Assembly (NCBI GenBank): GCA_047495785.1
Contig: JBLDXI010000003.1
Location: 1,178,001 to 1,242,000 of the forward strand
From: Lepidodermella squamata
Taxonomy: Eukaryota; Animalia; Gastrotricha
DNA: 64,000 nt
Direction: 5' to 3'
This document shows positions 5,465 through 64,000 of this stretch, piece after piece. Below the pieces are notes generated by a model. It saw nothing but the letters and a program-made list of their open reading frames with translations. It was not told the origin of the DNA and did no database searches. Numbering within the stretch: the first letter of the stretch is position 1; each line of letters starts with the position of its first letter. The position numbers and the translations under genes were made by a program.

Positions 5465-7377
<1,913 letters not shown>

Positions 7378-24249: not shown

Positions 24250-26258
24250 ATGTTTGTACGATACACAGTTCTACTCACTATTTTTGCTCAAAAATGCTTG
24301 TCTGCAAAAGAAGTAGACAATCGAGTGGCATGTCAGCCACCTCCTGCGATCATGAACGGCTATATAAGCGGCGGAAATCTCACTGCTCTTGCAGGAGATA
24401 TTCGTATGATCGTTTGTTACCCAAATTTCATCCGAACTGGTGACAGCTACGTCATATGCAGCAAATACGGAAATTGGATTATGGATACCGGCTCTTGCGT
24501 CCACGGAGATCACATTCATTGCGGAGATCCTCCACTTCTTCGATACGGTTTTATCGAGCCCGGAGGTGTGGAAACCGGTGCCATGAGGAAAATAATTTGC
24601 CTACCAGGTTACTCGATCCCAGATGACTCAAACTATGCGACCTGTCAAGAGGATGCGACGTGGCTTTTGCCGGCTCAATGTGCCAGGGACTGTTCAGATT
24701 CCCCGAAAATCGATAATGCCTTCATAACCCAGGGCAGCTACAAGGTTGGCACTGTTAGGACCTTCATCTGCCGAGAAGGTTACAAGCTCCAAGGCAGTAA
24801 CACTTCAGTCTGCGAAATTAGCGGTAACTGGAATAACCAAGGAAGTTGCGTTGAAGGTAAGATCAGTTTCCCTTTAATTTCTGTCAATAATGTAATGGGA
24901 TTTTTCAGATTCAAGTGCCGCTAAAGAGTGCCCAGTGTTGCCTTATGTGCCCAACGGAGCCGTGATCCCTGGCACCAACGAAGTCGGGGCCATTAGATTT
25001 GTGCTCTGCGATCCAGGTTACGAAATGACAAAAGATGCGGAAAATGCGATAGTTTGCAAGTCCAATGGCTTTTGGACTGAGCCAGGTGTTTGCGTCCTCA
25101 CTGGTAATATTTTTGAATAAAAAAATACATTTATCATCATTTCATGTTTGTATAGCTCGCGTTCTTCTAACTACAACACAACGAGCGAGAGCACCGGCGA
25201 CTAACCCCACTACTATTCCTAACTTTACTACAACGCGTCGAGCTGTAACTGGTGGCAGTGGGTCTGTAGCTACAACAAGGAGGAGTGTTACAGCTGCAAG
25301 TGCTAGAACAACAACTCGCCCTACCACTTCAACTACAACTACTACCACAACCTCGAGGCCGAGAGTATCAACCTCCCAAACCTTCCGAACCCGTGCGACC
25401 ACTAACAATGACCTTCAAGATGTGATTACGACTCGACCAACTGTTGTAACTACAACAAGCCAGGTTTTCCGCACTCAAGCCCCGACTTGCTGCGACGTGA
25501 AGCCGAAAACTCGGTCCTTGGCGCTGATCGAGGCCAGTAAGCAGGGCGATAGAGACCAAGTGCTACGTCTCCTTGACTCTGGGGCAGATCCTAACTCGGC
25601 CGATGTTAATGGGTGGACAGCCCTTATGTGGGCAGCTAATTCGATGAGTTTGAATCAAAGCGCCATTATCTATGACCTCATGTCATGCTGTGTTGATATC
25701 AATGCGAAGAATCAAGCTGGAATTACTGCTTTGATGGTCGCGTCACGGTCCGATCGAGTCGCACCTGTGAGACTCCTTTTGAGAAGAGGCGCGAATGTTA
25801 ACGCAGTCAACGATTTCGGATTCTCAGCTCTCATGTACTCTGCGCAAGACGGTTCTGCTTCCGTTGCTGAGGTTCTCCTTCAATCTGGGGCAGACATCAA
25901 AGTTCGAGATGTCAATGGGGATGATTCATTAATTTGGGCATCGAGATCTAACAAGTCCGAGACTGTTGATTTACTCCTTGCGAATGGAGCTGATGCTAAA
26001 TCGGCGAACAAGCGTGGAACTACGGCTTTGATGCATGCTTCTGAGAAGGGCTATATCCAGATTGTTACTAGCCTGTTGGCTAGAGGTGCTAATGCTACAG
26101 CTGTTGATGCGGACGGAAACACGGCGATGAGCTTGGCGAGGGAGAATGGTCAAAGCGCTGTTATCAACATTTTAGCGGCTAAGAGATACGCTGCTATGAC
26201 TCTCGATGGATCCATTGATATGTCAAAAGCTGTTCGAAACATGTTCAGCGATAACTAG
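24250..26258 (+). CDS. Array gene A: secreted 4x Sushi + Thr-rich linker + ankyrin module; exons 24250-24856, 24909-25103, 25156-26258 (~634 aa)
   Basis: Signal peptide MFVRYTVLLTIFAQKCLS; C..P.I.NG...C..GY...C...G.W...G.C modules; TCCDVK cap; GWTALMWAA and GADPN repeats; AATAAA at 26270. Confidence 0.88.
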
Positions 26259-26474
26259 TTCTTTTATTGAATAAATCCCGAGTGAAGCTGCATTTCAAGG
26301 GTTTAGTTTACACAACGGCAAAAACTGGTGCCGTGAATTTTTTTACCAGTGATACTCAAATTGCTGCTATTTCTGACACGAACCTGACACGTAGTAAAAT
26401 TTCGTGATATGTTCTGTCAATACGACACAATCCGCAAACGGTTAACACCATACTTGAAACTCGACGATACCTTA

Positions 26475-27741
26475 ATGTATTCAAGAATTTTCGTTCTCTT
26501 ACTATTCACACTTCGATTTACCGAGGCGCAGTTTTTCAATTTCCCAGGTCCACTTCAGCCATTTTTCAACAACAGACCGATTTTAAATCAGCAAAGTATT
26601 TTTCCAATACAATTTTCGAACCAGGGACCTATTAATGGAATCGGCTTTGATCTCTCCTTACGGCCAAATTTGTCTCCGATTACACCATTTCAAAATATAC
26701 TACCCCAAGGCTGCTCGCCGCCTATTTCAAACATTGAGAACGGAATGATAGAGATGAAACTCCAAAATCTATTCGCCCCTTTCATGCAGCAAGAATTTTT
26801 CAATCAGTTTTTCAAGAATTCAGCCCTCGTGAATCACTACAGCGTGGGTAAATTATTTACCGAACTTATTCTTTCACCTTTAATTCATGCGATATAAAGG
26901 AAGCCAATTGACAGTTCGCTGCAATCCTGGATTCGTGTTACAAGGTCCTGGGAGCACAACCTGTTTGTCGAACGGAGGCTGGTCTCTTGTAGGAAAATGT
27001 TTACCCGCACTTAAAGCAGCATCAGAAGGTGCTTGTGACTGCCCTTCGGATAGCAGCAGAACGCAATCCGTAGAACTTATTGAAAAAGCTCGATCTGGAA
27101 ATGCCTCTGCAGTGGCTCGTCTTCTTGCTAACTGCGCCGATCCAGACTCACAAGATCCGACCAACAAATGGACAGCATTGATGTGGGCCTCGAATAACGG
27201 TCATATCAGAGTAGCGGAAAAACTGCTAGATTGCGAGGCTGATCCTAATTTGCGAAACATAGCTAACTCAACAGCTCTTATGTTTGCGGCGAAAAATGGC
27301 AACTCATCCCTTGTCGACCTTCTTCTGGCAAATGGAGCTAACGTAAATGCATCCAACGACTTCAGATCAACAGCTTTAGCTTTTGCGGCTCAAAAAGGGC
27401 TTACAGATGTTGTGAAACAGCTGATACGTGCAAAGGCTGATATAGACGCTGTAGATCTTGACGGAAATACTGCCTTGCATTGGGCAACTCGGGGCAACCT
27501 CTCAGAAACTGCTGCTGCGCTGATTTCAGCCGGGGCTGATATCGACAAAGTTAACAAGAACAAGCAAACAGCCTTAATGATAGCGGCAAAAGGAGGATTT
27601 TTGCCGATTGTTAAGCTGCTGGTTGACGAAGGCGCTAATGGAAGCGCTGTTGATATCGAGGGCAACACAGCCGCTAGCCTGGCGGAAGAATACGGTCATC
27701 AAGCTATTGTTGACGTGTTGAGAGAGCGCGACACCAGATGA
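26475..27741 (+). CDS. Array gene B: secreted F/Q/N/P-rich N-terminus + 1 Sushi with loop insertion + ankyrin module; exons 26475-26847, 26900-27741 (~404 aa)
   Basis: Signal peptide MYSRIFVLLLFTLRFTEA; Sushi CSPPISNIENG..VRCNPGF..TCLSNGGWSLVGKC across a 52-nt intron; CDC cap; ankyrin repeats. Confidence 0.86.
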
Positions 27742-27896: not shown

Positions 27897-29258
27897 ATGA
27901 TTTTGCTCAACTTGATATCGCTATTAGTTTCAGTGGTCATATTTTTCGCAAAGCTTAACGACTCGGCAGTGATCGTTACAAATGGTAACTTTTTATGACT
28001 CATTTTATGCCTTGCAACTAGCCCACCTCACCTTAGGCTACTGCCCTGAGATTCCCGAGATCGAAAATGGGTACTTTGACAAGCCACATTATACCTTCCT
28101 AGGCCAAAAGGTCCGGATTCACTGTTTTCCCGGCTCTGTCCTAGTTGGCAAGACACACATGATTTGCGAAAGTTCTGGAAAATGGTCCGAACCAGGCACA
28201 TGCGTTTCGGGTAAATTAAACCCTGCAATTTATCCTCATATTCTGGATTAATAATTTCCCAACTAGAACATCCAAGATTTTGTAAAGACGAGCCTGAAAT
28301 ACCGCATGCCCTGCTATCCCATGGTCAAAACCATGTAGGAGCAGTTCGCCATTTTTACTGCCGCGAGCCTTACTGGCTGTTCGGCGTTGGGGCCGCTAAA
28401 TGCGAGGAAGGCGGTGTCTGGCGGCCAGTCGGGGAGTGTCGAAGCCCTGATGCCCCGATTTGGATGAACCTATCATCTCAAGCTGCCGCTGACCCCTTCG
28501 AAAGCTTGTTTTTAGGATCAGTTTGCTGCGGCGGGTCGACTGTTCATTCTAGCATTTTGGTCGACGCCGCGAGACAGGGGGATCTCGACCAAATAACTCG
28601 GATGTTATCAAGAGGCGCAGATCCTAACTCTGTAAACGACGACGGGTGGACCCCTTTGACCTGGGCAGCTAATAACGGCAAGGCAACCATCGTCGATAAG
28701 TTACTTGACTGTTGTGCCAGTCCTGACATTCCGAATGAGATGAGAAGTACTCCTCTTATGTTAGCCGCTAGGAGCGGGGTGTTAACATCAGTCGAGCTAC
28801 TATTAAGGAAGGGGGCAAATGTCAGCGCTGTTAACCTATTCGGCGAAACGGCGCTGACCTTCGCGGTAAAAGGAGGCCGAAATGTTCACAGAAGGATTGT
28901 AGAAACTTTACTTAAGCGCAACCCACCTCTTGAACTAAGGGATTTAACTGGACACAACGCTTTGCATTGGGCAGTTATTGGCCGAAATACGGAGATCGTT
29001 AAATTGCTTTTACGAGCTAAAGCTGACGTTAACGCCCGGAATGGCGACGGCCAAACGGGGTTAATGCTCGCCGCCATTACAGGCGATTACGAGCTGGTCG
29101 ATGTGCTGATTAACGCCAAAGCTGACGCTACGATCACAGATTACAACGGAATGACAGCCCTGACTCTAGCTATGGAGAATTCTTTTTCTGACATTGCATT
29201 TTCCCTCTCGAAATCGATGAGGAATTCTTCGATCATTGCTAAAAAAAGCCGGTTATGA
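27897..29258 (+). CDS. Array gene C: secreted 2x Sushi + ankyrin module; exons 27897-27984, 28037-28210, 28267-29258 (~417 aa)
   Basis: Signal peptide MILLNLISLLVSVVIFFA; YCPEIPEIENG and FCKDEPEIPHA modules; VCCGGS cap and DCCASP; ankyrin repeats. Confidence 0.86.
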
Positions 29259-29693: not shown

Positions 29694-30244
29694 ATGCGGA
29701 TACTCATTATTGCAGCCCTTTATTTGGCAATCGCAGCCAGCAGTTCCCTCGCACAGACGTTTGGTAGGGCTTTAGTTTTCAGCCTTCAGCAATCATCCTT
29801 TTATTTAAGGCTATTGCGACAACTTCCCTACCATCGAAAATGGATTTGTCGAGCGTCCCACTTTCGTATGGATTGGCCAGGTGATCAAGGTGAACTGCAA
29901 CCCTGGTTACGTTGTTCAAGGTGCCAATCTCATCACTTGCACTACCTATGCCAAGTGGAGCCAGCCCGGTGTCTGTGTTCCAGGTAAACAATTTTGGAAA
30001 CCTTATTTTAAACCTCATTCAAGCCGTATTTACAGTTCGGCCCACCTCTTGCCCTGATGAGCCGAAAATGAATAATGGAGTTGTTCTATCTGGAGCAAAT
30101 CACGTTGGTGCAATTCGCCAATTTTACTGCCTGTCAAATCTCAAAGTCTCAGGGCCGGCTTCGATTGTTTGCGAAACCAATGGTTTATGGAAAAATTACG
30201 GCAAATGCATCCCTAACAGCCAGTTTGAAAACTACTCCTCATAA
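29694..30244 (+). CDS. Array gene D: small secreted 2x Sushi-only protein; exons 29694-29763, 29810-29983, 30036-30244 (~150 aa)
   Basis: Signal peptide MRILIIAALYLAIAASSSLA; YCDNFPTIENG and SCPDEPKMNNG modules paralogous to gene C; stop codon followed by AATAAA at ~30299. Confidence 0.85.
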
Positions 30245-30403: not shown

Positions 30404-33400
30404 ATGCTTGATAAATTACTGTTAATTTTCGCCTTATGGCTAACAATAATCCACGCTCAGCGGTTAGTTCAAAAATCGTCTTTCGATTTCAACTGCGTAT
30501 CACCGCCTATCATTCCGAATGCCGAATACACTGAAGCTGTAGGCAGTAGAATTTTCTTCAAATGTATCACAGGCTTCACGTTATCAGGCCCTGATCATAC
30601 CCAATGCTCGGCTGGAGAATGGTCTATCCCCGGCTATTGCGCCCAACAATGGTGTCTTGAACAGCCCAGCCTAGATGGGGGCGTTGTTACTCCCGGCTCG
30701 AGTGAACAAGGCGCTGAGCGTTACGTAACCTGCACTCGTGAGCTTAAACGATTCAAAGCCATATGTCTGAGCACTCGTCGTTGGTATTACGAAGATACGT
30801 GTTCGGTCGTAGGTAAATAGGTCATGTTATCTCTAAAAAGCACTAATCTGAGGCGGTTTTGCTATAATAGGCCGTGAATGTGGCGATGATCCAAGAGTTC
30901 CTGGTGGTTTCGTAGAGCCTGGTCCGAACAAGCCCGGTTCCACCAGACGGGTAGGGTGCTTCAAGGGCTTCTTGGTCGAGTCAACTGGATACATCCGTTG
31001 TACAGAGACTGGGGAGTGGTCATACCCTGGATATTGCCAAGGTAAGGTGATTCATACTTCCGGGCTATACATTCACCTGAATTTACTTAGAATCACCTCC
31101 TGACCGATGCCGCCGTGTTCCGTCTATTGAAAATGGCTATATCTTCAATTATGGAAATTACACAAATGACGACCTAGTCGGCGTCACTCGTTACTTCGGC
31201 TGCAATGAGGGTTACTTCGTCGATGGGAAGAATCAGTTAGTTTGTGGTCCTGATGGAAGGTGGCAGTATCTTGGCTATTGTTTACGGGTTGATAATCCTA
31301 CCAGTTGCGGTGCACTGCCGGGTATGAACAATGGCTGGTATGAGGATGGTGGCTATGAAATAGGAGCTGTTCGTAAAATCGCGTGCTGGAATAACTACAG
31401 TGTTAAACTGGGAGAAAAATGGATTCTTTGCCTCGACAACGGACTGTGGAGCCAGCCTGGACTTTGCACTAGAGGTATGATGGAAAACCCAGGATAAATT
31501 CATCATTCGTTGCTTTGGCATTTTAGATCCTATTAAAGAGTGTCGACCTTTACCGGAGGTCGCAAATGGATATTTTCGTTCAGGGAACTTTGCGATAGGC
31601 TCAAAAAGGTATCTAATGTGCAATCGTGGTTACTCCCGCCAGGGAAACGACTGGATAAGTTGCATGCCGGATGGTTACTGGACATCGCCTGGCTCCTGCT
31701 TGTATTCTGGCGTTGAAGAAATAGCATCTCCAGTGTGCTCCAGGCCACCGAGAATCGCCAATGGCTACGTGAACGTCAATAATTTGATAGAATGCAATGA
31801 TGGCTTTGCCCTTGTTGGGAGAAGGAAAGTCACATGTGGGCCCAGAGGTTGGGCTGTTTCTGGTTACTGTTCTGATAGTAAGCTAAATATTTCTATATCA
31901 ATTTATCTTTATTCTATCAATTTCAGAGCTTGCAACTGATCCTCCAATCCCTCTTGCGACGTTTCCCCCAGAAATTGACGTGACAGTTGAATGGAACAGC
32001 GGGGAAGTTATTGGTTTGCTTTGAGAAAGTCGATTCCTTATCAAAGCTAAATGAATTTATTTCATAGACAAATGTGCAGCTTCGTTACCTGTCATTGAAA
32101 ACGGTTTTGTCCGAGATGGTCCAAGAACTCTAGGATCTAGACTCGAGGCGAGATGCTACAACGGCTATGAATTGAAAGGAAGGTCATTCATCGTCTGTAA
32201 CCGATGGGGCTGGTCAAGTCCTGGTTTCTGCGACCCAAGAGTAACTAGCCTGGGCCCTACTTCTGTTACAGCTAGTACGATCATCAGAGCAACTCCACCA
32301 CCGTCAAGATGTGAGTAAACTCAATGAGAATTCGATAAATTTGAAGACTTTTTCATGAATGCCAGCTTGTCTCGGCCCGATACCGACAATTGCTAATGGT
32401 TACTATGTCAAAATGGACGACGAGCTAATAAGAGTTGGCTCGAAACTATACATTCAATGTTTCGATGGCTATGTGATAGTTGGAAAAGGATCGGCTGAGT
32501 GTACTGAAAAGGGTTGGGATACGCCAGGAACTTGCGCTTCGGCCTCAAGTATTACCACTGCAAGAGTGCCTCTACTTTCGTCTTCTACCACTAGTCGACC
32601 AACGCCAGCAATCGGTGAAACTACTTTGGCTTCGACACAGCTCACAACTACTTTACCACCAACCTGCAATACTACTTTGCCACCTGTTCCATTCGGTTAT
32701 TCGGAGATAAGCACTAATTTCTCCGTAGGATCCTTCAGACGAATCGGTTGTTTCCCAGGGTACCAAATCGCGGGAAGCCCGATAATAAATTGTACTGTGC
32801 AGGGATGGACCCCACCTGGTGCATGTATTCCAATACCTCCTCTAGGGCCATGCGGGCCAGCTCCTAGTATCAATTCTGGTCGGGCAGTTCTCATCGAGAC
32901 AAGCAGAAGCGAGATTTATTGTTACGATGGCTATCAGTTGACCGGAGAACGCTTCATAACCTGCGGTAGTGATGGATGGTCAAAGAAAGGGGATTGTACT
33001 CTTGCTCCATCTTCTACCGTTGCTACAACCACATCAAAAGCGTCGAGCTCCAACTGTACCGGTCCCTTGCCAGTTGTTGAATTTGGTTTTGTTGACCCTT
33101 TTGGTGAAAATTCACTCGGCTCTTTGAGGAGAGTGGGCTGTTTCCCAGGTTTCGACCTGGTTGGGGAAAATTCCACGACTTGTCTAGTGCTTGGTTGGAC
33201 GAAACCCGGAATATGCGTTCGGCGATCGAACTCAACAACTGCGGCTGCGTTAACTACTTCACCCTCTCTATCAACCCGTGGAATTTCAACGACCCTGAGT
33301 GTGACAACAACGTTCCCAGCCACAACATTAACTACTACGTCGCCTTACTCTCCAACTACCGCAACCGTTAACTTCGCATCAGGTAAGAGAAGCATATAGC

Positions 33401-51842: not shown

Positions 51843-53009
51843 ATGATCATCACATTGACCGAAATCTGCCTGGCTGTAATTCTTCCGGCGATTGTCCAGG
51901 CCCAGATGAGTAAGCATACAAATATTGGACCTTAGTGCCTTCGCAATGAAGTTTTTCAATTAGGATACTGTGGATTGGCGCCCTACATCGAAAATGGATT
52001 TGTGGTCGATCAAGTTTCACACTACTCCCCAGTTGGCTTCGCAAAATTTCTAGCATGTGATCCCAACTACACCTTGCAAGGACCGGTCGCAATTCGTTGC
52101 ACAGATCGCGGCTGGACAACACCCGGGAAGTGCGTTAAAAGTATTCGGGTGACTGATCCGAATGAAGACGTGCCTTGCAATTTCGTCCCATTCGTTGCTA
52201 ATTCTCGGTTTGTAAGCCATGGCCAAATACAAAACTATCTATGGCGGATGTTTCAATGCCTGCCTGGCTATGAATTGGACGGAGCGGCTTTCATCACGTG
52301 TGATCTCGCAAGGAACACGTGGGTCCGAAGGGGTGAATGTCGGAATCGTAAGTTATTAGATTTTTGCTTTGAACTCTAGAAACATTGGTCTTCCTAGCTA
52401 ACAAACTTGGTCAACTTTTCTGCGTTCGAGAGCCTCAATTGTCCAATGCTATTATCGAGCAAGGCCATTCTTATATTGGCGCCACGAGAACGTTTACCTG
52501 CAATATTGGATATAGCGTTTCTGGAAGAAATTTGGTAACTTGCCTCATGGATGGCAACTGGCGAGCAAATGGTACCTGCGTTCCAGGTATGAATTGCGGC
52601 AATATCAGGGTGATGTAGAGTCTTTTTGTGAATTCAGCTAGCTTATGCTTTGGCCCTCTCCCTGTTGTGAAAAACGGCAATATCAATGGCGGCGGTATCG
52701 GAGTAGGGGCTACGCGGTCAGTAGTCTGCGATCCAGATTATGAGCTCATTGGCGCTTCAAAGATCTTCTGCCATCAAGGTGGATGGACAATGCCGGGTAT
52801 TTGCAAACAAAAATGTAAGCTCCTTTTAAACAGCAGCAAGGTCTTGGACTTTTCCTCCATTTTTTTCAGGGCAAAAGCCAGTTGCACTACTGCCGCATAA
52901 GGTCTACAATCGCAAGCTCAATCTCGAACAGGAGAATTACTACGGCGAGTACAGCGAATCCTCAGAAGAAAATTCGAAGAAGGGACAATCCTATGAATAT
53001 TATGACTGA
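51843..53009 (+). CDS. Array gene L: secreted 4x Sushi + acidic Tyr-rich tail (..ENYYGEYSESSEE..SYEYYD*); exons 51843-51909, 51964-52347, 52398-52586, 52638-52814, 52870-53009 (~318 aa)
   Basis: Signal peptide MIITLTEICLAVILPAIVQA; four Sushi modules; stop at 53009, AATAAA at 53021; no ankyrin. Confidence 0.82.
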
Positions 53010-53184: not shown

Positions 53185-55047
53185 ATGCCTGCGTTATCTT
53201 ATGGTGGTTTACTGTTTTTGCTTCAAATCGTCCGTCTAATTCTATGTCAAACATATTGTGACCAGCCGCCTGATGTCGAATACGGTTACATCGAGTTATC
53301 CAACCCGGTTCTCCTATCGCCTGTCGGTTCTAAAGGGCTTGTGAAGTGCGATTTTAAAGACTTCGTAGTAGACGGGCCTGAGTCAATTACGTGTCAAGGC
53401 AGCGGCGACTGGACTGTTCCAGGTCGTTGTGTCATACTGGGTATGAATTCTATTCAGGAACAATTTCTCCCATTAATTTTTATCAAATCAGGAGAGTCAT
53501 CACTGTGCAGACCTGTGCTACCGGATTTCGTACCCAATGCTGAGTTCGTTGACCTCGCTGCGGCGGGTGATTCATCAGTATGGCGACGCTTCAAATGCAA
53601 ACCGGGATACAAGTTGAAGGGCTCAGATTTCGTTCAATGCCTATTTGAAGAGAACAAGTGGGTTCCACAAGGCGAATGCATACCAGGTCGTTAATCTAAT
53701 ATGACTCTAATTATGTAACAATATAAACCAAAACAGAGAAAATTTCAAGGTGCATTGCCGAGCCACAAATTCGTAACGGAATCGCGTATTCTGGGAGCAA
53801 TTTAATTGGATCAACTCGAGTTATCGAATGTTTCATGGGATTTCGCGTATTTGGACTTAACAAAGTGACTTGTTTAGCAAATGGCACGTGGATTCAAAAC
53901 GGAACTTGCGTGCCAGGCTATCCTGACGATATAAATAACGAAAAATCTAGCGAAATTTCGACTTCCACCCCTTTGTATTGGGAACCCATGGCTTTTAACA
54001 TCTCTCAGCAATTCTCAGGCATGCCAGATTGGGCGATAAGCAGACCTAGTTCAAAGCCGCGTGATGAGGCTAGCTGTGAAGGTATCAACCCACCGAATAT
54101 TTTGAATGGTTGGTACAATAGCCTTGGAGCATCTAAATCAGTCAGCTGCGTTGATGGCTACGTAGTCAACGGTTCATCATTTATCACTTGCAACAACGGC
54201 GAATGGACAACGCCTGGGAATTGCATTCCAGGCGACAAAAGTGGGTAAACCTATTTTACACAATTGAATTTTGAAATGTTTCCTTGCAGACCAAACTGTT
54301 TGCCGTTGTGGTTACTACCCGAAAGTGCCGTCTCAGCAGCTGATCAGCCTCGTTAAAATCGGCTCCGAGGCATTCGTGGCGGCTTATATTCAAAGAAACG
54401 CAGATCCTAACTCTCGGGATCCAAGTAACGACTGGACAGCCCTTATGTTGGCTACGAATCGCGGAAATATCCCTGTTATGAGGACACTTTTACAATGTTG
54501 CGCCGATATTGGAGCGACTCGAAATGGAGACCAATTGACAGCTTTGCATCTTGCTGCTAGAAATAATGTTACGTCAGCCCCACTCCAGTTACTTTTGGCG
54601 CAAAAAGGGGTCGACGTCGGAGCGACTTCTAATTTCGGATCAACAGCTCTTCACCTGGCTGCTGAACGTTGCGCTACGAGAAACGTTGAGTTATTGATCA
54701 ACGCTAAGGCTGATTTGTCGGCTACAGATCGTAAAGGCATGACAGCCTTGCATTACGCTGCTGTAGCGAATTGTTCCGAGTCAACACGCATTCTTTTGGT
54801 AAACGGAGCGCAAGTTGATGCAGTGGATGATAGCGGTGTCACTGCCCTCATGATTGCGGCGAAAAATGGTGATAATGCGGTTGTTCGAGAGTTGCTTTCT
54901 AGGGGCGCGAATTCCAGTTTGAAAGATCGCGACGGCAAAACAGCGGTGGTCTTAGCTTTCGAAAACGGTCGCAGTGATGTTGTCAACATGATAACGAATT
55001 ACCTCGGAAATTTGTATGCTAAAAAATCACTCAAAACAGGAAAATAA
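53185..55047 (+). CDS. Array gene M: secreted 4x Sushi + ankyrin module; exons 53185-53440, 53492-53686, 53737-54240, 54290-55047 (~570 aa)
   Basis: Signal peptide MPALSYGGLLFLLQIVRLILC; CDQPPDVEYG and three further modules; CRCGYYPK cap and QCCADI. Confidence 0.85.
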
Positions 55048-55589: not shown

Positions 55590-57448
55590 ATGCAACTTTC
55601 GCCTCACGTCCTACTGTTTGTTGTTGTCGCCGGCTGTTATCGCACGCTCTCGCAAAGAACATGCGGCCCATCTCCTGATGTTGAGTATGGCTACGCTGAA
55701 TTTTCGGCCGCATTTTCAATATCCCCCATTGGAACAAAGCGTTTCTTAAAATGTTACTTCAAAGACTTCATTATTGATGGTCCAACAACAATTATCTGCC
55801 AGGATGATGGAAATTGGTCCATTCCTGGTCGCTGCATTAAGAGAGGTTACATTTGCATTCCAGTATCGGTTCACAAATTAATTCGCCTACGATTTTAGGA
55901 GCTCCAACGATATGCAGGCCAGTTTTACCCGATTTCATGCCCACTGCGGAGTTCGATGCGCAATCTGAGGTGGATGATTTCGCTGTTACTCGGCGTTTCA
56001 AATGCAAACCTGGCTATCGACTGAAAGACTCTGATTACATCACTTGCTACTTCGACGAAAACATATGGATCAAGGAAGGAGATTGTATTCCAGGTAAATA
56101 TTCAATTACTCCATCTGATAAACTCATAGTGTTGATTATAGATGAAATAAAGAGATGTATCCCTGAACCTCAAATTCCACATGGAATCGTATACTCTGGT
56201 AACAGTACGATTCGATCGATCAGAGTCATCGAATGCTTCTCTGGTTATCGAATCTATGGCCTTAATAAGATGACCTGTATGGCAGACGGTAATTGGTTCC
56301 AGAACGGATCTTGCGTTCCTGGTTACCCGGATGATTTTTTCAACCGTGGTAAGACTTCGACAACGACCACTCAAGTTACGCCAAGAAACAGGATTACCAC
56401 CATTCGACCATCCTCAACAACAACTGCGGAACCTGATGAGCCAGAGCCAATTGAGGAAATCCCGGAGTTACCCGACCCAATTTGTGATGGAAAGCTACCG
56501 GCTCTTCTGAATGGATGGTATATTGACTATGGATCGTACAAAGAGATTGCCTGTGTCAATGGCTTCATTATCAATGGGACGTCTTACATCCTTTGCACTG
56601 TTGCGGGTTGGTCACAACCTGGAAACTGCGCTTCAATCGATAGCGGTAAACTTATTTCGTTAATTTGTCACTTTGTTATTGAAAGCGTTTTTATTGTTCA
56701 AGTTTTCAAAGAATGTAAATGCGGAATCAGTCCGAAGGTCCAGTCGCAACAGCTGGTAGAGGCTGCAAAATTTGAAACCGAGGCAGTAGTCACGTCGCTT
56801 TTACAAGGCAACGCAGATCCCAACTCACGCGACCCAGGAGATGGCTGGACGCCGCTAATGTGGGCAGCGAACCGAGGAAATGTCCCTATGATGACACAGC
56901 TGCTGAAATGCTGCGCCAGCACGGAGGTGCGCAACGTCGCCCAATCGACCGCTCTGTTATTCGCAGCCAGAAATGAAACGACCAGCGGCCCGCTAGAGCT
57001 GTTGCTAGCCAACAAAGGTACCAACGTTAACACAGTCAATGTTTTCGGCTCAACGGCGCTTCATTTCGCCGCGCAGCGATGTGCGACTAAAAATGTTGAG
57101 CTGCTTATCAACGCCAAGGCTGACGTTGCGGCGAAAGATCGTGACGGAATGACAGCTCTTCATTATACGGCTCGAATTAACTGTGTCGAAGCTGCAAGGG
57201 TCTTGCTAGTTCGAGGTGCCCCGATCGATGCAGTTAATATCAACGGAACCACCCCTTTGATGATTGCTGCGAAATTCGGCAACGCTGCTATCGCAAGGGA
57301 GCTGATCATTAGAGGCTCGAATTTGGATGCTGTCGATATGAATGGAGATAACGCGTTGAAAATTGCGGCGGATTTCGGGAAAATTGATATTGTCAATCTG
57401 ATCACTGTAACACGACGCGTCTCATTACCGAGAAAAGCGAGGCCTTGA
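55590..57448 (+). CDS. Array gene N: close paralogue of M, 4x Sushi + ankyrin module; exons 55590-55845, 55899-56093, 56142-56645, 56703-57448 (~566 aa)
   Basis: Signal peptide MQLSPHVLLFVVVAGCYRTLS; first three exons have the same lengths as in gene M (256/195/504 nt); CKCGISPK cap and KCCAST. Confidence 0.85.
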
Positions 57449-57723: not shown

Positions 57724-59685
57724 ATGATTAGAGCCCATTTTCTACTTGCTTTCGCTGTGACATGCAGCTTCCTAGCCAAGTCGCGTGCAGAGGAAATGAC
57801 CTATTACTACTTCTTTGACGAAAACGGGCGAAATATTTCGACTAGGCTCCATCCACCAGGGCAGAAGCCTAGCATAGCCTCTTCACCAAAATCAGCAAAG
57901 GAGGCAATGAAAGAGTCTGTTGACGTCCCAGCTCCTATAGAATACGATTTACCACCGACTTTGCCACCAGCCTTGTTCGAAAAAACGCCAGTTAGCGCTC
58001 AGAAGGACGAAGAAATGTACACGCCAATTACATACCCGACTCAACAAGTTTTCACACTACCAGATACCCCGGCACAACCGGCTGTCACTCCGCCTCGCTC
58101 ATCAGCAGGATTTTTCGGAGGTTGGAGAGTCGGGCCACCTCTACCATCTGAACCGCAAGCCGAGGAGCCTGCTACAAGTCCTAGTTCTCCTGCGCCTGTT
58201 TCACCGTCAAGATTCGGAAAGTTGATTCGAGGGTCAAATCGGGATAATGCAATTGATGTCAACCTGCCGATTGATTCAACGCCAACAAGTTCGACTACCA
58301 CCACAACCACTTCCGCGATCACTTCGACTATTCCTACCACCACAACTACCAGGTTTTCAACGGCAGAAACATTGACCCCGGCGGTATCTTCCGTTGGCAA
58401 AGCTGGTGGAAAGTTAATCAAGGGTTGGATGATGAGCCAGCCTTCGACAGCGGCTTCTGTTTCGACTTCTACGACTACTACTCAGGCAACAACGCAAGCT
58501 AGGACCATTCCTTTAACTGTAGCGACTACTACTACTCAGGCAGCAACGCAAGCTAAGACCATTCCTTCAACTGTAAAGACAACTACGTCAGCCGCCACTA
58601 CTCCAATCACTTTGCCAACGCCTGCTAGAGGACGAAGCAGATCGACTTCAACAACTACTCAAGCTTCAAGACTTGCTACTGCTTTGATTTTCACCAGACC
58701 AAAAATGCCTCCTCAAATTTCGACCAGCTCCACCCCAAAACCTACTACAACCCAATTTATAAGCAAAGTTGCCATGAAAGATGATGATGATCTGCCGCCA
58801 CCCATCGACGGAGATGAACTACCGCCACCTTTACCTGATCAACCTGTGTTCGTGGCGAAAAATTCGATGTCAAACAAGGAGGATGACTTGCCACCACCTA
58901 TGGTTGAAATCGAGGTACCTCGAGTCACGTCGACGACTTCAAGACCAGTTATCGTTCAGTATAGGACTAAACCCGTTTGCTGCGGATTGTACCCAAAACG
59001 GCAATCAGAAGCTTTTGTGGCCTTAGTCCAGAATGGAAACGAAACAGCGGCGATTAATTTGCTGAAAGGTCGTGTGGATCCTTACTCGGCTGATGCGGTA
59101 GGATGGACTGGTATAATGCGAGCTGCTAGTTTGGGCAGGGTCGAGGTCATGAAGTTCCTTGTTGCAAATTGTTGTGTCGACATCGATTTTCGAGATGTTG
59201 ATAACACAACAGCTCTCATCTCTGCAAGTCAATACAATCGAACTAGAATGGTTGAGCTACTCCTGGCAAACAAGGCGAACCCGGATCTAAGAGATCTGAA
59301 TAACATGACAGCATTAATGTGGGCTGCAAATAATGGATTAGGCGAAATGGTCAGGATTTTGTTGAGGAGTGGCGCGAAGCCTGATTTGCGGGATAAGGAT
59401 GGAAATTCAGCTCTAATGTATGCCGCTATGTCCAATTGCAGCTCTTGCGCTCGATTTTTGCTGAACAAGGATGCGAGTATCAACCAGCAGAACAAAAAAG
59501 GCCTGACTGCTCTGATGATTGCTGCAAGGGCTCGTTTCGATGGTCTTATGCTTGATCTGTTGAAGGAAGGCGCCGACACTCAAATTCGGGACGCAAACGG
59601 CATGCGGGCTCTGCAGGGTATCCAATTTCCACAGGAACTTTCGCAAGACATCTGGTTTGCCATCAATAACAGGATCATTGCTTGA
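57724..59685 (+). CDS. Array gene O: secreted mucin-like (Pro/Thr/Ser) + ankyrin module, no Sushi, single exon, 653 aa
   Basis: Signal peptide MIRAHFLLAFAVTCSFLAKSRA; ~400-aa P/T/S region; VCCGLYPK cap and NCCVDI; ankyrin repeats. Confidence 0.86.
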   Translation: MIRAHFLLAFAVTCSFLAKSRAEEMTYYYFFDENGRNISTRLHPPGQKPSIASSPKSAKEAMKESVDVPAPIEYDLPPTLPPALFEKTPVSAQKDEEMYTPITYPTQQVFTLPDTPAQPAVTPPRSSAGFFGGWRVGPPLPSEPQAEEPATSPSSPAPVSPSRFGKLIRGSNRDNAIDVNLPIDSTPTSSTTTTTTSAITSTIPTTTTTRFSTAETLTPAVSSVGKAGGKLIKGWMMSQPSTAASVSTSTTTTQATTQARTIPLTVATTTTQAATQAKTIPSTVKTTTSAATTPITLPTPARGRSRSTSTTTQASRLATALIFTRPKMPPQISTSSTPKPTTTQFISKVAMKDDDDLPPPIDGDELPPPLPDQPVFVAKNSMSNKEDDLPPPMVEIEVPRVTSTTSRPVIVQYRTKPVCCGLYPKRQSEAFVALVQNGNETAAINLLKGRVDPYSADAVGWTGIMRAASLGRVEVMKFLVANCCVDIDFRDVDNTTALISASQYNRTRMVELLLANKANPDLRDLNNMTALMWAANNGLGEMVRILLRSGAKPDLRDKDGNSALMYAAMSNCSSCARFLLNKDASINQQNKKGLTALMIAARARFDGLMLDLLKEGADTQIRDANGMRALQGIQFPQELSQDIWFAINNRIIA

Positions 59686-60428: not shown

Positions 60429-62223
60429 ATGGCCACGATACTGCGACACGTCTCGGCTTTGATCTTCGCCGTTGCCGCCCTTCTCCAGGTTCCGGCGGCC
60501 TCAGCGCAGGAATGCCTCCGCCTCCCTAAAATAGAAAACGGAAAATTGGATCTTCTCAACGCTGTAGAGGTAAAAGTTGGAACTACGCTCAACATTGTTT
60601 GCTTCGAAGGTTATACCATCACTGGATCCAAAAATGTCACCTGCTCAGAGAATGGATGGACGCAACCTGGAGATTGCGTTGAAAGAAGTAAGATATTGAA
60701 ATAGTAGCTTCTCGTTAAATAATCATTTGTTCCAGTTACGCTTGGTTGCCCGAGATCGGATGACATTCTTGATGTTCTAATTCCTCATGCTCGCTTTACA
60801 ACACCTGAAATTTTCGAGGATGGATTCGTTATGCGGCGGTATTTTCGGTGTAAAGCTGGCTACAACTTACAGGGGATGGACTTCATCGAATGCGACGATC
60901 CATTTAACACTGAAATGACAGATTGGTCAGCTCTTGGAACTTGCAAAAGAGGTTAGAAGTAATTTCAGAGTTCCAGATTCTCATCTTTTATTCTTCCTTC
61001 AAGACAATTCAATCTGCCCTATGACTCCGGTACCAAATGGAAAGTTCTCTGAGCAAATGTCTGAGGTAGATGGTGGTAATTTAAGACTCATGTTCCGATG
61101 CGACCCTGGTTTCGTACTTCGCGGATCAAATGTCATGTACTGCAATCCTCGTGAAAAGCGTCCTGATTACGCCGGATGGCGAGCATTCGGCCAGTGCCTG
61201 AGACCCGAAACTGAATTCGAATTAATCGACTGCGGACCTCCTCTTGTTGTTGAAAACGCAATTATCGAGTCTGCAGACCCTCGTTTCCGCTCTCGGAGTA
61301 AATTCAGCTGTGCTAGTGATTTCGAATTAGTCGGGAAGAACGAAATTTACTGCGGAGCTTACTCGCAATGGTTCGTCGCTGGAAATTGTGTTCCCATTTC
61401 GGGAAAGTCTAAAATTCAAGAAATGGTCACTGCTGCAATTCGGCGAAGGACTACAACACCGCCGAGAACTACTATTGTACCTGACTCTCCACCCAAATGC
61501 CTATGCGGGACAGCAAGTTCTTACAAATTAATGGATGCTGTCCTGGCTGGAAATATCACAGGGGCTGAGTACCTCCTAACAACAGGACAGGCGAATTACA
61601 ATTCTAGAGATGCGAAGCAATCAGCTTTCATCCTAGCATCTAGAAAAGGCGATGAAGCAATGGTTCGGCTGTTCCTCAAGTGCTCAGAGTGTTTGGAAGT
61701 CGACGCCACTAGCAGTGAAGGATCGAGTGCTTTATTTTTCATAGCTAGAATGGAGAACTCTACAGAATTACTTGGCCAGCTGATTAAAGCTGGAGCGATG
61801 ATTGATTTCCGTAATCGATACTTCTCAACGCCACTTCACTACGCGGCGGCTCATGGCCGAAAGGAGAATATAGAGATGTTATTGAAAGCTGGAGCTTATG
61901 TCAACTCGCAAGATGCTGATGGCTATTCCGCCTTAATCTGGGCAGTTCATGGGAACCATTCAGATTGCGTAGCGCTGTTACTCGAGAATGGAGCGAATGC
62001 CAACGTTCAAAACAGGGCTGGTCTTTCTCCATTAATGATTGCGGCGAGATATGGTTACCTTGAAATTTTAGAGATGCTCCTTCAAGTTAGAAGTATCAAC
62101 CTAGCGGCCAAGGATACCTATGGCTTCACAGCTACAGACTTTGCGTTTCAGTTCAAAAACTACGAAGCAGCCGGTCTTTTGACGATGTTTGAGGTCAGAA
62201 ATTCGGCGAAGAAGGACGCGTGA
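60429..62223 (+). CDS. Array gene P: secreted 4x Sushi + ankyrin module; exons 60429-60687, 60736-60951, 61004-62223 (~564 aa)
   Basis: Signal peptide MATILRHVSALIFAVAALLQVPAASA; CLRLPKIENG and three further modules; KCLCGT cap and KCSECL; STPLHYAAAHG. Confidence 0.85.
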
Positions 62224-62514
62224 GCTGATTACTGATAATTATCTTTAAAACTCGTTGTATTTTTTTGTAAATCTTTCGTCGTCGCTCATTCTGCTCGCTG
62301 ATATGAAGAAAAAAAATAAAAGGCACGTCGAGCAAGTTGACCAACACTAGTAGTTGAATACTTTTAACAAGTTAGTTTATGGTCACGTATGAAGGTTCTG
62401 CTGCTACTGCTGGCCAGGCTCTTGGATTAATAGCATTACGCATAGGCACCTGTGATATCACGATGTAGTTTCTCGCTAGCCTAGAGAATTATTTACACGA
62501 CCGACGTGTTTATC

Positions 62515-64000
62515 ATGATGCTTGTCGTCCTAACCACAATTTTACTATTTGCACTATCAAATGCCGTTGAATTTTGCCCGCGGCAAATCAACATCTTCAA
62601 CGGCAATGTCGATTTCAGTGACGGCCGACCTAATCCTGTCGGAATTCGGCGACCTCTACTATGCTCGAAAGGTTTTATATCCCTTGGCCAACCTTACGTC
62701 GAATGCACATCTGACGGCTGGTTCGTACCAGGAAATTGCATAAATCGAAGTAAGATTTTAAAAACCTCACAGGACGACTTTATCGTGATTTTCTTTTAGC
62801 TTCATTTAGATGCCGGAGATCTGACGGATCATTACCTAAAATCGCATTTTGGGACAGCCCAGAATGGGTTGATGATTATTGGTTCGTAAGGCGTTCTTTC
62901 AACTGTGTTGCTAATTACACCCTGAAAGGATTAAGCTATTACGAATGTGACGAAAATCAGAGAGCTCAATGGAAGGCAAGGGGATTCTGCGAGCTTACCG
63001 AAAATCAACTGACAGTCAAAAAAATCGTGCCAATGTGTTCCGATCTGGCGATGAATTTCCTTCCAAACGCGAATTTCACGGGAAATGCGATTCTAGCTCC
63101 GGCTGGGTATTACACAAGATTTTTCCGCTGTAATCCCGACTATTACCTATTTGGAAGCTCCCCGACTGCGTTGTGCAATCCAAATGAGAAGAGAAGTGAA
63201 TACTCTGGTTGGAAAATTCTTGGATCATGTCGACAAGGTTTGATTTATAATCCATCAATTTTTGGCTTAATTTTCTTGTTTTCAGATCCGATGAATTTCC
63301 CAACATGCCCCGAACCTATAATCGAAAATGGGCAAGTTCGAGTAGGAGCGAACACATTCTCCTCCCGCCGCTTCTTCCGCTGCGCTGCTGGCTATGAATT
63401 GCTTGGCGTCAACCACATTATTTGCACTCTAAATGGAACTTGGTTCACCGCAGGAGGCTGTGTACCAGTTGGACAGACAACTATGTTCCCAGCTACAACA
63501 ATTGCCGCCACTACCACGATAAATTATCCTTCTATTTTCGAGTTCGTGTCATTTCGCTCCCGTGCGCTGTCTAATACTAGTTCGCAGCTACCGTATTTTC
63601 GAAACAGCACTACAACTATGCAACCTAGCGTTGCCAGGATAACTATTCAACTAAAGACGACACTCAGGCCGAGAACAACAATGGGAGATTCTCCATTTCA
63701 AGCAATCACTCGGCGCAGGTCAACAACAGTTGCCCCCACTCAAGGAATCCCCCAAGGAATCATGAGATCAACTCAGGGGCAACTAAACACATGTATTTGT
63801 GGAGAAATCAACTCGCCAGACCTGGTCGCAGCAGCGAAATATGGAAACATTCAAACAGTTCAGTATCTCTTATCAAACGGGGCAAGTTACAATTCCGTTG
63901 ACGAAGCAAATCAAACGGCGCTACATGCTGCAATTCGAAATAACCAACAGCGAGTTGTTGAGATTTTCATGTCATGCGTTGAATGCATCAACCTCGAGGC
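62515..64000 (+). CDS. Array gene Q (3' truncated by window edge): secreted 4x Sushi + Thr-rich linker + ankyrin module, paralogue of P; exons 62515-62749, 62800-63237, 63286->64000
   Basis: Signal peptide MMLVVLTTILLFALSNA; manual translation gives four Sushi modules, a TCICGE cap, QTALHAA and MSCVEC. Confidence 0.82.

What the first reader, a model, noticed from the sequence alone, without database searches (positions are those of the whole stretch)
24250..64000. Tandem array of at least 17 genes encoding secreted Sushi/CCP-mucin-ankyrin proteins: a candidate undescribed extracellular ankyrin system
Seen: over 40 kb every gene is on the + strand, starts with a hydrophobic signal-peptide-like segment and has no visible TM or GPI anchor. 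All are built from one kit: 0-14 Sushi modules, a Thr/Ser/Pro linker and 0-6 ankyrin modules of up to ~6 repeats (12 Sushi+ANK, 4 Sushi-only, 1 mucin+ANK; about 20 ANK modules in total). Established: Sushi/CCP is an extracellular disulfide module (complement regulators, adhesion). Animal ankyrin repeats are almost always cytosolic or nuclear; secreted exceptions are few, e.g. spider latrotoxins. I do not know of a characterised family fusing the two in one soluble secreted chain. Inference: a lineage-specific, diversifying repertoire of secreted binders (natural DARPin-like heads on Sushi/mucin stalks). Plausible roles are innate recognition or symbiont control, adhesive/mucus/cuticle matrix, or gland/venom effectors.
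Basis: partly seen in the sequence, partly recalled or inferred. Interest (0 to 1): 0.95.

Follow-up and report, generated by a model that had tools for sequence, protein, structure and literature searches.

The report
Secreted Sushi-ankyrin gene array
A small invertebrate genome carries a 52-kb row of about 22 expressed genes for exported proteins in which ankyrin repeats, a binding module that normally works inside cells, sit behind extracellular Sushi modules and carry conserved cysteines that probably form disulfide bridges, so they seem adapted to work outside the cell.

Summary
From 24250 to the window end, every long ORF is on the + strand. I model 17 genes: 12 Sushi+ankyrin, 4 Sushi-only and 1 mucin+ankyrin, with 20 ankyrin cassettes. 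All have a hydrophobic N-terminus and none has a membrane span. Several single ORFs hold Sushi and ANK together. Spliced public contigs join the Sushi exon of gene 1 to its linker+ANK exon.

New here:
- The array runs about 12 kb past the window.
- Eighteen of 20 cassettes carry four conserved cysteines. Over 41 cassettes, the number of N-tail cysteines matches the number just after helix 2 of repeats 1-2.
- A related animal in metagenomes has a Sushi+ANK gene at the same syntenic place.
- Strain differences are 34 synonymous to 5 non-synonymous.

Extracellular, probably disulfide-stapled ankyrin cassettes are well supported, though no bond was measured. "Diversifying" is not supported: the paralogues are old and constrained. 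"No precedent" is wrong: Toxoplasma RON9 joins a signal peptide, ANK and Sushi. No related family turned up in the protein or paper searches. This scan had already noted the same family on other pieces of this genome. Function is only inferred: secreted multivalent binders.

The parts
24250..26258 (+). G1: signal peptide, 4 Sushi, Thr-rich linker, 1 ANK cassette. Exons 24250-24856, 24909-25103, 25156-26258.
   Evidence: Pfam. Both introns are skipped in RNA contigs of runs X1 and X3. 27 of 32 listed differences are synonymous.
26475..27741 (+). G2: signal peptide, Gln/Phe/Pro-rich segment, 1 Sushi split by an intron, 1 ANK cassette with the CxC + Cys(repeat 1) + Cys(repeat 2) pattern. Exons 26475-26847, 26900-27741.
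   Evidence: Sushi and ANK lie in one ORF. The intron 26848-26899 is skipped in X1. Cysteine table.
27897..29258 (+). G3: signal peptide, 2 Sushi, 1 ANK cassette. Exons 27897-27984, 28037-28210, 28267-29258.
   Evidence: Pfam. Intron 28211-28266 is skipped in X1. Model.
29694..30244 (+). G4: signal peptide and 2 Sushi only. Exons 29694-29763, 29810-29983, 30036-30244.
   Evidence: Both introns are skipped in one X1 contig with 136 and 68 letters on the shorter side. Model.
30404..36472 (+). G5: signal peptide, 14 Sushi with Thr/Ser-rich linkers, 3 ANK cassettes (34229-34975, 34976-35737, 35738-36469) in the last exon.
   Evidence: Pfam. Model with phase-1 introns of about 52 nt. The 28-aa exon 31927-32013 is doubtful. 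No RNA check.
34250..34255 (+). N-tail Cys-Cys of cassette G5a (residues 8-9 of the folded cassette).
   Evidence: Conserved in 18 of 20 cassettes. The AlphaFold tail has pLDDT 62-77 and a one-turn helix over residues 7-10.
34439..34444 (+). Cys-Cys directly after helix 2 of repeat 2 of cassette G5a (residues 71-72), the proposed partners of the N-tail pair.
   Evidence: Invariant or nearly invariant columns C71 and C72. The position follows helix 62-70. Covariation with the N-tail Cys.
36678..42109 (+). G6: signal peptide, about 5 Sushi, short Thr linker, 6 ANK cassettes in one 4.2-kb exon (37929-42109).
   Evidence: Pfam: 13 Ank_2 stretches. Six cassette envelopes. Model.
42410..44149 (+). 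G7: signal peptide, 3 Sushi, linker, 1 ANK cassette that lacks both cysteine pairs.
   Evidence: The 5' exon is less certain.
44285..45249 (+). G8: signal peptide, 2 Sushi, Pro/Thr-rich acidic tail; no ANK.
   Evidence: The in-frame intron 44600-44650 explains the hydrophobic stretch.
45691..46748 (+). G9: signal peptide exon and 4 Sushi (ORFs 45770-46210 and 46428-46748); no ANK. Boundaries are approximate.
   Evidence: Pfam on 45770-46210. Frame listing.
48107..49164 (+). G10: signal peptide, 2-3 Sushi, short linker, short ANK array (3-4 repeats) with no cysteines.
49253..51506 (+). G11: signal peptide, 2 Sushi, Pro/Gln-rich and Thr-rich linkers, 1 ANK cassette (CC + CC). The middle exons are uncertain (introns of over 90 nt are likely).
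51843..52900 (+). G12: signal peptide and 4 Sushi only.
53185..55047 (+). G13: signal peptide, 4 Sushi, 1 ANK cassette (CxC + CC, plus an extra Cys pair).
   Evidence: Pfam. Model. In-frame intron 53441-53491.
55590..57448 (+). G14: paralogue of G13 (cassettes 58 % identical). Signal peptide, 4 Sushi, Thr linker, 1 ANK cassette.
   Evidence: Sushi and ANK lie in one ORF. Identity. In-frame introns at 56094-56141 and 56646-56702/56711.
57724..59685 (+). G15: single-exon gene with a signal peptide, about 400 aa of Pro/Thr/Ser-rich mucin-like region and 1 ANK cassette; no Sushi.
60429..62223 (+). G16: signal peptide, 4 Sushi, Thr linker, 1 ANK cassette (CxC + CxxC).
   Evidence: Sushi and ANK lie in one ORF. 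Model.
62515..64000 (+). G17: signal peptide, 4-5 Sushi, linker, ANK cassette cut by the window end. It is completed in L005:27-1517.

Best explanation
This is an old, expressed tandem array of about 22 genes, 17 of them in the window. The genes encode soluble secreted glycoproteins built as: signal peptide, then 0-14 Sushi modules, then a Thr/Ser/Pro-rich stalk, then 0-6 copies of a seven-repeat ankyrin cassette.

The cassette is a distinct extracellular form of the ankyrin domain. A short N-terminal tail carries one or two cysteines. These are most likely disulfide-bonded to cysteines placed directly after helix 2 of repeat 1 and/or repeat 2. The result would be a covalent N-cap, comparable in logic to the cysteine-rich caps of extracellular leucine-rich-repeat domains.

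The proteins most likely act outside the cell as mono- or multivalent binders. The variable groove face of each cassette would hold a protein ligand. The Sushi rod and glycosylated stalk would give reach and further binding sites.

Shown here: domain content, one-chain fusion, splicing, transcription, purifying selection, the cysteine covariation, and conservation in a related species.

Inferred: secretion, the disulfide bonds, and binding.

My preferred role is conserved, housekeeping-type extracellular binding (surface coat, matrix or mucus assembly, or cofactors of extracellular proteases) rather than an arms-race immune repertoire. That preference is the weakest step.
For: - Sushi and ANK lie in single ORFs.
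- Spliced contigs of two runs join the Sushi exon to the linker+ANK exon of G1.
- All 17 N-termini are hydrophobic. There is no true membrane span, no KDEL and no hydrophobic C-terminus.
- 18 of 20 cassettes carry CC or CxC in the N-tail plus CC or CxxC after helix 2 of repeat 2. The two cassettes without one pair lack the other.
- The cysteine count is even in 18 of 19 complete cassettes. CC dipeptides occur at 6.1 per 1000 aa, against 0.23 in 120 generic ANK proteins.
- Over 41 cassettes from this genome and a relative, the N-tail cysteine number equals the loop cysteine number in 34 automatically. It is 38 after removing cysteines of the preceding Sushi. Five balanced states occur: 2|0+2, 2|1+1, 1|0+1, 1|1+0 and 0|0.
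- The AlphaFold model has pLDDT 93.5 and seven repeats, with the tail ordered at pLDDT 62-77. It matches DARPins at TM 0.85-0.87.
- N-glycosylation sequons occur at 1.27 per 100 aa, against 0.54 in generic ANK proteins. The last gene of the array has a mucin ORF with 21 sequons in 302 aa.
- Canonical binding-face positions are more variable than the rest (2.62 vs 1.77 bits, p about 1e-5).
- 34 synonymous against 5 non-synonymous differences.
- A related animal has a signal peptide, Sushi modules and one ORF with Sushi plus 2 ANK cassettes right after its USP5 gene, as here.
Against: - No disulfide was measured, and the tools give no coordinates, so the bond geometry is untested.
- In the model, the N-tail pair and the repeat-2 pair are separated by repeat 1. 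The tail must therefore cross it.
- Signal peptides were judged by hydropathy only.
- RNA support covers only G1-G4 and comes from assembled contigs, not reads. Strand, level and tissue are unknown.
- The models of G9 and G11 and the 5' ends of G7 and G10 are uncertain.
- Sequon enrichment over shuffles is modest (z = 1.9).
- G16 has an odd cysteine count.
- Higher variability on the binding face is typical of all ankyrin families and shows nothing specific.
- Nothing identifies a ligand, a tissue or the organism.
Confidence: 0.6

Rival explanations
1. This is a humoral immune or symbiont-recognition repertoire. The ANK heads would be diversified pattern-recognition modules. They might work with the protease-Sushi-ANK fusions that earlier notes report elsewhere in this genome, as a complement-like system.
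For: - Sushi strings and protease-Sushi layouts are typical of complement and clotting factors (established knowledge).
- Both domain types are hugely expanded here: 1734 Sushi and 3582 ANK-cassette first-look candidates.
- The binding-face positions differ between paralogues.
- Earlier notes s1-393950 and s1-373998 report protease-Sushi-ANK genes. I did not test them.
Against: - There is no sign of rapid turnover. The nearest paralogues are 30-58 % identical.
- 34 of 39 differences are synonymous.
- Position and cysteine pattern are kept in a species whose NT5C2 is only 67-71 % identical.
- No induction or tissue data exist.
Confidence: 0.2
2. These are exported effectors or toxins whose ankyrin part acts inside or on cells of another organism (prey, host or competitor). 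Precedents are latrotoxins, oomycete secreted ANK effectors and the apicomplexan RON9.
For: - Secreted ANK proteins with such roles are known: P. sojae ANK effectors (PMC11139960), TgRON9 (PMC3299665) and alpha-latrotoxin (my own knowledge).
- G1 is well represented in RNA contigs.
Against: - Structural disulfides and heavy glycosylation suit an extracellular working place, not a reducing cytosol.
- There is no translocation or pore-forming domain. Pfam finds only Sushi and Ank.
- Venom and effector genes usually evolve fast, unlike these.
- The related species occurs in environmental metagenomes, which hints at a free-living animal.
Confidence: 0.1
3. The ankyrin parts are in fact cytosolic. 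Either the N-terminal segments are not cleaved signals, or internal promoters or processing give ANK-only intracellular proteins, and the cysteines bind metal or are redox sensors.
For: - Ankyrin repeats in animals are almost always cytosolic (established knowledge).
- Signal peptides were not tested with a trained predictor.
- Vicinal cysteines can bind metals.
Against: - Sushi modules need the oxidising secretory pathway, and they lie in the same ORF as ANK with no membrane span between them.
- The G1 junction contigs have depths like those of the ANK exon.
- Cysteine-free ANK proteins of the same genome lack both the tail and the loop cysteines together.
- Thr/Ser-rich and sequon-rich linkers sit directly before the cassettes.
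Confidence: 0.05

Closest known systems
Toxoplasma gondii RON9 and its Neospora, Eimeria and Cryptosporidium orthologues (PMC3299665)
   Same: One secretory-pathway chain with a signal peptide, ankyrin repeats (6) and a Sushi/CCP module. It shows that ANK can travel through the secretory route next to Sushi.
   Different: - It is a single gene, not an expanded array.
- The order is ANK then Sushi, with one Sushi.
- It has PEST repeats and a predicted C-terminal membrane span.
- It is a rhoptry-neck protein of a protist parasite.
- The paper describes no cysteine-stapled N-tail.
- Sequence relatedness beyond the shared domains was not tested here.
Designed ankyrin repeat proteins (DARPins), e.g. 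PDB 6moi, 6mol
   Same: The fold is almost identical (TM 0.85-0.87, rmsd 1.0-1.1 A, about 35 % identity). The variable positions fall on the same groove face. DARPins are used as extracellular binders.
   Different: DARPins are artificial and free of disulfides, with helical N- and C-caps. The cassette here has seven repeats, four conserved cysteines and N-glycosylation sequons.
Alpha-latrotoxin family of widow spiders
   Same: A secreted animal protein with a long ankyrin array that works outside the producing cell.
   Different: Latrotoxins have an N-terminal wing/body domain and about 20 repeats, form pores, and have no Sushi or mucin part. None of these features was found here.
Secreted ANK effector family of oomycetes (Phytophthora sojae; PMC11139960)
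   Same: A signal peptide plus ankyrin repeats, expanded as a family.
   Different: They are plant-pathogen effectors with no Sushi modules, from a different kingdom, and are thought to act in or on host cells.
Regulators of complement activation and other CCP-string proteins (factor H, C4BP, DAF)
   Same: Strings of Sushi modules, each largely in its own phase-1 exon, in clustered tandem genes. The four Sushi-only genes (G4, G8, G9, G12) have just this layout.
   Different: No complement regulator carries ankyrin repeats. No complement function or partner is shown here.
Cysteine-capped extracellular leucine-rich-repeat domains (LRRNT/LRRCT; e.g. lamprey VLRs, Slit, Toll)
   Same: The logic is the same. 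A solenoid that also exists in the cytosol gains a disulfide-bonded terminal cap when used outside the cell, and it can form families of binders.
   Different: The fold is different (LRR, not ANK) and the cap modules are different. This is an analogy only.

Membership tests
Sushi/CCP/SCR module (PF00084) | Match to the family profile above the curated cut-off (20.7 bits) | tested here: met
   Scores of 26.9-87.2 bits in 12 window ORFs. Also met in L005 and in the relative's L088.
Sushi/CCP/SCR module (PF00084) | About 60 residues with four cysteines and a conserved Trp before the last Cys | tested here: met
   Visible in the translations, e.g. ...C..G(F/Y)...G....C...G.W....P.C.
Ankyrin repeat domain (PF12796/PF00023) | Profile match above the cut-off and a helix-turn-helix solenoid fold | tested here: met
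   Ank_2 scores of 98-551 bits. AlphaFold pLDDT is 93.5 with 14 paired helices. Foldseek gives TM 0.85-0.87 to ankyrin structures.
Classically secreted soluble protein | N-terminal signal peptide | tested here: inconclusive
   All 17 N-termini have a hydrophobic core (KD 1.6-3.2) followed by small residues. No trained predictor was available.
Classically secreted soluble protein | No membrane span, GPI signal or ER-retention motif | tested here: met
   The best later 19-residue hydropathy windows are introns or ANK helices. The C-termini are hydrophilic and none ends in KDEL or HDEL.
Classically secreted soluble protein | Protein found outside the cell | not testable with these tools
   Needs proteomics or tagging.
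Disulfide-stapled ankyrin cassette (proposed here and by earlier notes of this scan) | Conserved, even-numbered cysteines at fixed positions that covary | tested here: met
Disulfide-stapled ankyrin cassette (proposed here and by earlier notes of this scan) | The cysteines are within bonding distance and oxidised | not testable with these tools
   The structure tool returns no coordinates and there are no experimental data.
RON9 family (Apicomplexa) | Signal peptide, repeats, 6 ANK, then 1 Sushi and a C-terminal membrane span | tested here: not met
   Here Sushi precedes ANK, there is no C-terminal span, and the copy numbers differ.
Latrotoxin family | Latrotoxin N-terminal domain followed by about 20 ANK | tested here: not met
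   Pfam reports only Sushi and Ank families.
Regulators of complement activation | CCP-only chains that bind C3b/C4b | not tested
   The layout is shared by G4, G8, G9 and G12. I did not look for C3-like genes in this genome.

The most novel reading that the evidence does not exclude
The cysteine-stapled ankyrin cassette could be the recognition head of a humoral, complement-like system of this animal lineage. Soluble Sushi-ANK proteins and protease-Sushi-ANK fusions would bind targets with ankyrin grooves. That would make ankyrin a third solenoid or domain type, after immunoglobulin and leucine-rich repeats, recruited for extracellular recognition on a genomic scale.
Probability: 0.15. Interest if true: 0.95.

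Novelty: new variant of a known kind. Interest (0 to 1): 0.72.

Why it matters
Ankyrin repeats are the textbook intracellular binding scaffold. Engineers had to design DARPins to use them outside cells.

Here an animal seems to have done this itself on a large scale. It has a fixed seven-repeat cassette, a probable disulfide N-cap and glycosylation sites, mounted on Sushi rods and mucin stalks. The layout is kept under purifying selection and shared with at least one related species.

If the bonds and the secretion are confirmed, three things follow:
- It defines a new extracellular domain type.
- It gives natural templates for stabilised ankyrin binders.
- It opens the question of what a whole class of extracellular ankyrin proteins binds in a little-studied invertebrate lineage.

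Tried and rejected
1. An exhaustive profile search of 1.84 billion representatives with the cassette alignment gave over 1 million hits. The 150 listed were giant generic ankyrin proteins, useless for finding relatives.

2. Word-indexed searches with a Sushi+ANK ORF and with the alignment gave only generic ANK proteins. Identity was at most 43 % and covered the ANK part alone. None of the listed hits had PF00084. None of the 390 fetched proteins has the cysteine signature in context. The length window and the exclusion of near genomes limit what this says.

3. The ESM Atlas returned only generic ANK clusters.

4. A JGI metagenome scan with the G1 cassette gave 80 loci at 31-44 % identity. None had Sushi, and one had a chance signature in a GC-rich bacterial-type contig.

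5. Exact look-ups of two window proteins found nothing.

6. My first two exon-chaining runs read through stop codons and merged genes. The models reported are hand-curated from them.

7. A loose Sushi regular expression merged modules and was not used for the counts.

8. One paper search was swamped by the word 'disulfide'.

9. The organism could not be named. NT5C2 is 53-59 % identical to arthropod, mollusc, brachiopod and nemertean proteins, and no named close relative appeared.

10. Rejected: assembly artefact, because independent DNA contigs are collinear. Rejected: pseudogenes, because the ORFs are intact, spliced and constrained. Rejected: bacterial contamination, because the genes have spliceosomal introns and Sushi modules.

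Full report
**What is there**

The window has about 45 % G+C throughout. Its first 24 kb hold ordinary eukaryotic genes on both strands:
- two tandem NT5C2-like 5'-nucleotidases
- a histidine acid phosphatase
- GID8
- PSMD4
- SPCS1
- USP5

From 24250 onward, all 18 ORFs of 150 aa or more lie on the + strand. Pfam finds only two kinds of domain in them, Sushi (PF00084) and ankyrin (PF12796, PF00023 and relatives). All score far above the curated cut-offs.

The ORFs 26887-27741, 55853-57448 and 60934-62223 contain both domain types without interruption. The same holds for L005:27-1517, which completes the last gene of the window. The fusion is therefore a fact of the DNA and not of a gene model.

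**Transcription and splicing**

I laid them on 24200-30100.

Two of them come from different studies and carry different organism labels. They behave as RNA: their contigs leave out six stretches of 46-56 nt. All six begin G|GTAA or G|GTAG, end in AG and are phase 1. They also leave the spaces between genes uncovered.

The third run behaves as DNA. Its depth is flat, it shows no joints, and its contigs cross the G1-G2, G2-G3 and G3-G4 boundaries.

The joint 25102>25155 was seen in both RNA runs. It links a Sushi exon of gene 1 to the exon that holds its Thr-rich linker and ankyrin cassette.

These are assembled contigs, so they say nothing on strand, level or tissue. Only G1-G4 were covered.

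**Gene models**

I used the confirmed intron type in an exon-chaining script and then curated by hand. This gives 17 genes:
- G1, 2, 3, 5, 6, 7, 10, 11, 13, 14, 16 and 17: Sushi plus ankyrin
- G4, 8, 9 and 12: Sushi only
- G15: mucin plus ankyrin

G5 has 14 Sushi modules and three cassettes. G6 has about five Sushi modules and six cassettes in one 4.2-kb exon. A profile search finds 20 cassettes.

The models of G9 and G11 and the 5' exons of G7 and G10 are less sure.

All 17 N-termini have a hydrophobic core followed by small residues. Hydrophobic stretches further in occur in G8, G13 and G14. They are short introns that happen to be in frame and free of stops, with proper GT..AG ends. The rest are ankyrin helices. 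No C-terminus is hydrophobic and none ends in KDEL or HDEL.

**The array is longer than the window**

The window is G000:C3:1178001-1242000 of a 121-Mb assembly. Cassette matches on the + strand continue to C3:1254371. The fetched loci L005 and L006 show about five more genes of the same build. The last has a Thr/Ser-rich ORF with 21 N-glycosylation sequons in 302 residues, placed before its cassette. After that, the genes are different.

The array is thus about 52 kb with some 22 genes.

Genome-wide, the first look found 3582 candidate stretches for the cassette profile and 1734 for Sushi. All 150 scored Sushi candidates were above the cut-off. Both modules are hugely expanded in this genome.

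**The cassette**

An alignment of the 20 cassettes shows a unit of about 230-250 residues that is homologous over its whole length. AlphaFold2 with this alignment gives pLDDT 93.5 and seven helix pairs. Foldseek places the model next to designed ankyrin proteins (TM 0.85-0.87, rmsd about 1 A, 35 % identity).

Eighteen cassettes carry four conserved cysteines:
- CC or CxC about eight residues before the first helix
- CC or CxxC directly after helix 2 of repeat 2

The cassettes of G7 and G10 lack both pairs. G2 has CxC in the tail, with one cysteine after helix 2 of repeat 1 and one after helix 2 of repeat 2.

Cysteine counts are even in 18 of 19 complete cassettes. By my own binomial calculation, the chance of 18 or more even counts is about 4e-5 if parity were random. 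CC dipeptides are 27 times more frequent than in 120 generic ankyrin proteins.

I then added cassettes from the rest of the array, from 18 other loci of the genome and from a related species. Over these 41 cassettes, the number of tail cysteines equals the number of cysteines after helix 2 of repeats 1 and 2 in 34 by automatic count. It is 38 once cysteines of the preceding Sushi module are set aside. Five balanced states occur: 2|0+2, 2|1+1, 1|0+1, 1|1+0 and 0|0.

This is what one expects if each tail cysteine is bonded to one loop cysteine. It is hard to explain otherwise.

The tail is predicted as ordered (pLDDT 62-77, a helical turn and a bridge to the loop after repeat 1). The tool gives no coordinates, so the bond geometry remains untested.

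Sequons are 2.3 times denser than in generic ankyrin proteins. They are only mildly enriched over shuffles (z = 1.9). One sequon sits at the same place in repeat 5 in about half of the cassettes (read by eye).

**Evolution**

The nearest paralogous cassettes are 30-58 % identical, so nothing in the array is young. The canonical groove positions are more variable than the framework (2.62 vs 1.77 bits, p about 1e-5). This is usual for ankyrin families.

Of the 39 best-supported differences between the window and the public runs that fall in coding exons of G1, G2 and G4, 34 are synonymous. That gives a rough omega near 0.05 by my own estimate.

A 5'-nucleotidase of the window has unnamed relatives at 67-71 % identity in ENA metagenome assemblies. 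Its best named relatives are protostomes at 53-59 %. The metagenome contigs are syntenic: two NT5C2 genes, GID8, PSMD4, SPCS1 and USP5. Directly after USP5 comes a gene with a signal peptide and Sushi modules.

I fetched the contig end (L088). It shows one ORF with a Sushi module (25.3 bits), a Thr-rich linker and two ankyrin cassettes. Their cysteines follow the 2|1+1 pattern. The second cassette is 49 % identical to that of G2, which has the same pattern.

The family, its location and its cysteine logic therefore predate the split of two clearly diverged species. This argues against a fast-diversifying, lineage-private repertoire.

**How it most likely works**

Sushi modules fold only in the oxidising secretory pathway. 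No membrane span separates them from the cassettes. The linkers look like O- and N-glycosylated stalks, and the cassettes carry covarying cysteines and sequons.

I therefore read the products as soluble secreted proteins. Their ankyrin cassettes would be held by a disulfide-stapled N-terminal cap and would bind protein ligands with the groove face, singly or up to six per chain.

The strong constraint, old paralogues and conserved synteny fit fixed endogenous ligands better than an arms race. Candidate roles are surface coat, matrix, mucus, or cofactors of extracellular proteases. No data bear directly on the role.

**Comparison with what is known**

The paper library holds only eight papers that use 'secreted ankyrin', 'extracellular ankyrin' or the like.

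Two precedents matter. Toxoplasma RON9 has a signal peptide, six ANK and one Sushi, plus a predicted C-terminal span, and sits in the rhoptry neck. It shows that the combination is not unheard of, but it fails the layout test for membership. Secreted ANK effectors are an expanded family in oomycetes. Latrotoxins are the animal example of secreted ankyrin arrays (my own knowledge).

None of these has Sushi strings, mucin stalks or the cysteine staple.

Protein, atlas and metagenome searches found no member of this family outside the genome, apart from its syntenic relative. These searches are limited by hit-list length, by length windows and by the exclusion of near genomes.

Earlier notes of this scan describe the same family on other pieces of this genome, including protease-Sushi-ANK fusions and the cysteine covariation. 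I reached the cysteine reading from the translations before that look-up. I tested it here on independent cassettes.

**Verdict**

The reading 'extracellular ankyrin system' is well supported as architecture and probable topology. 'Diversifying' and 'without precedent' are not supported. Function is open.

It is a new variant of known kinds (CCP mosaic proteins and ankyrin binders), with a probably new extracellular form of the ankyrin domain.

Noticed in passing
window 683-4282 and 5465-7371 (- strand); L001 6920-11305: Two tandem NT5C2-like cytosolic 5'-nucleotidase genes. The same tandem pair stands in the syntenic metagenome contig of the related animal, so the duplication is old.
   Followed up: partly
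window 9215-10534 (+): A histidine acid phosphatase gene with a signal peptide and a C-terminal membrane span lies between the nucleotidases and GID8. It is absent from that place in the relative's syntenic contigs (L001, L088).
   Followed up: no
window 16619-16951 (-): A reverse-transcriptase fragment of a LINE-like element sits in the region spanned by the USP5-like exons (15281-22718), probably inside an unusually long intron of a genome whose introns are otherwise about 52 nt.
   Followed up: no
window 44600-44650, 53441-53491, 56094-56141, 56646-56702: Short introns whose length is a multiple of three and which have no stop codon. If they are left in, they add hydrophobic peptides that mimic membrane spans. 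This is a trap for gene callers and a possible source of intron-retention isoforms.
   Followed up: partly
L001 11850-21291: The related animal's contig carries at least seven tandem GNAT acetyltransferase genes (PF00583/FR47) next to the nucleotidases. I did not check whether this genome has the same array upstream of the window.
   Followed up: no
L006 1326-2234 (G000:C3:1252326-1253234): A Thr/Ser-rich ORF (34 % Ser+Thr) has 21 N-x-S/T sequons in 302 residues, just upstream of the last ankyrin cassette of the array. It is probably a heavily N-glycosylated stalk.
   Followed up: partly
window 26530-26800 (G2) and 50084-50766 (G11): Unusual low-complexity linkers stand in place of the Thr-rich stalk: a Gln/Phe/Pro/Asn-rich segment in G2, and Pro-Gln and Pro-Met repeats in G11.
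   Followed up: no
G000:C3:1350300-1358500 (L092, L094, L095) and C3:1084200-1085700 (L093): A second group of cassettes lies on the same contig, all with the CxC + Cys(repeat 1) + Cys(repeat 2) pattern and seven cysteines in three of the four. They seem to be a separate subfamily.
   Followed up: partly
whole genome G000: The first look found 1734 Sushi and 3582 ankyrin-cassette candidates in 121 Mb. Dense Sushi clusters lie on C15 near 5.0 Mb, C19 near 2.47-2.52 Mb, C33 near 1.16 Mb, C13 near 2.79 Mb and C3 near 2.85-3.19 Mb.
   Followed up: no
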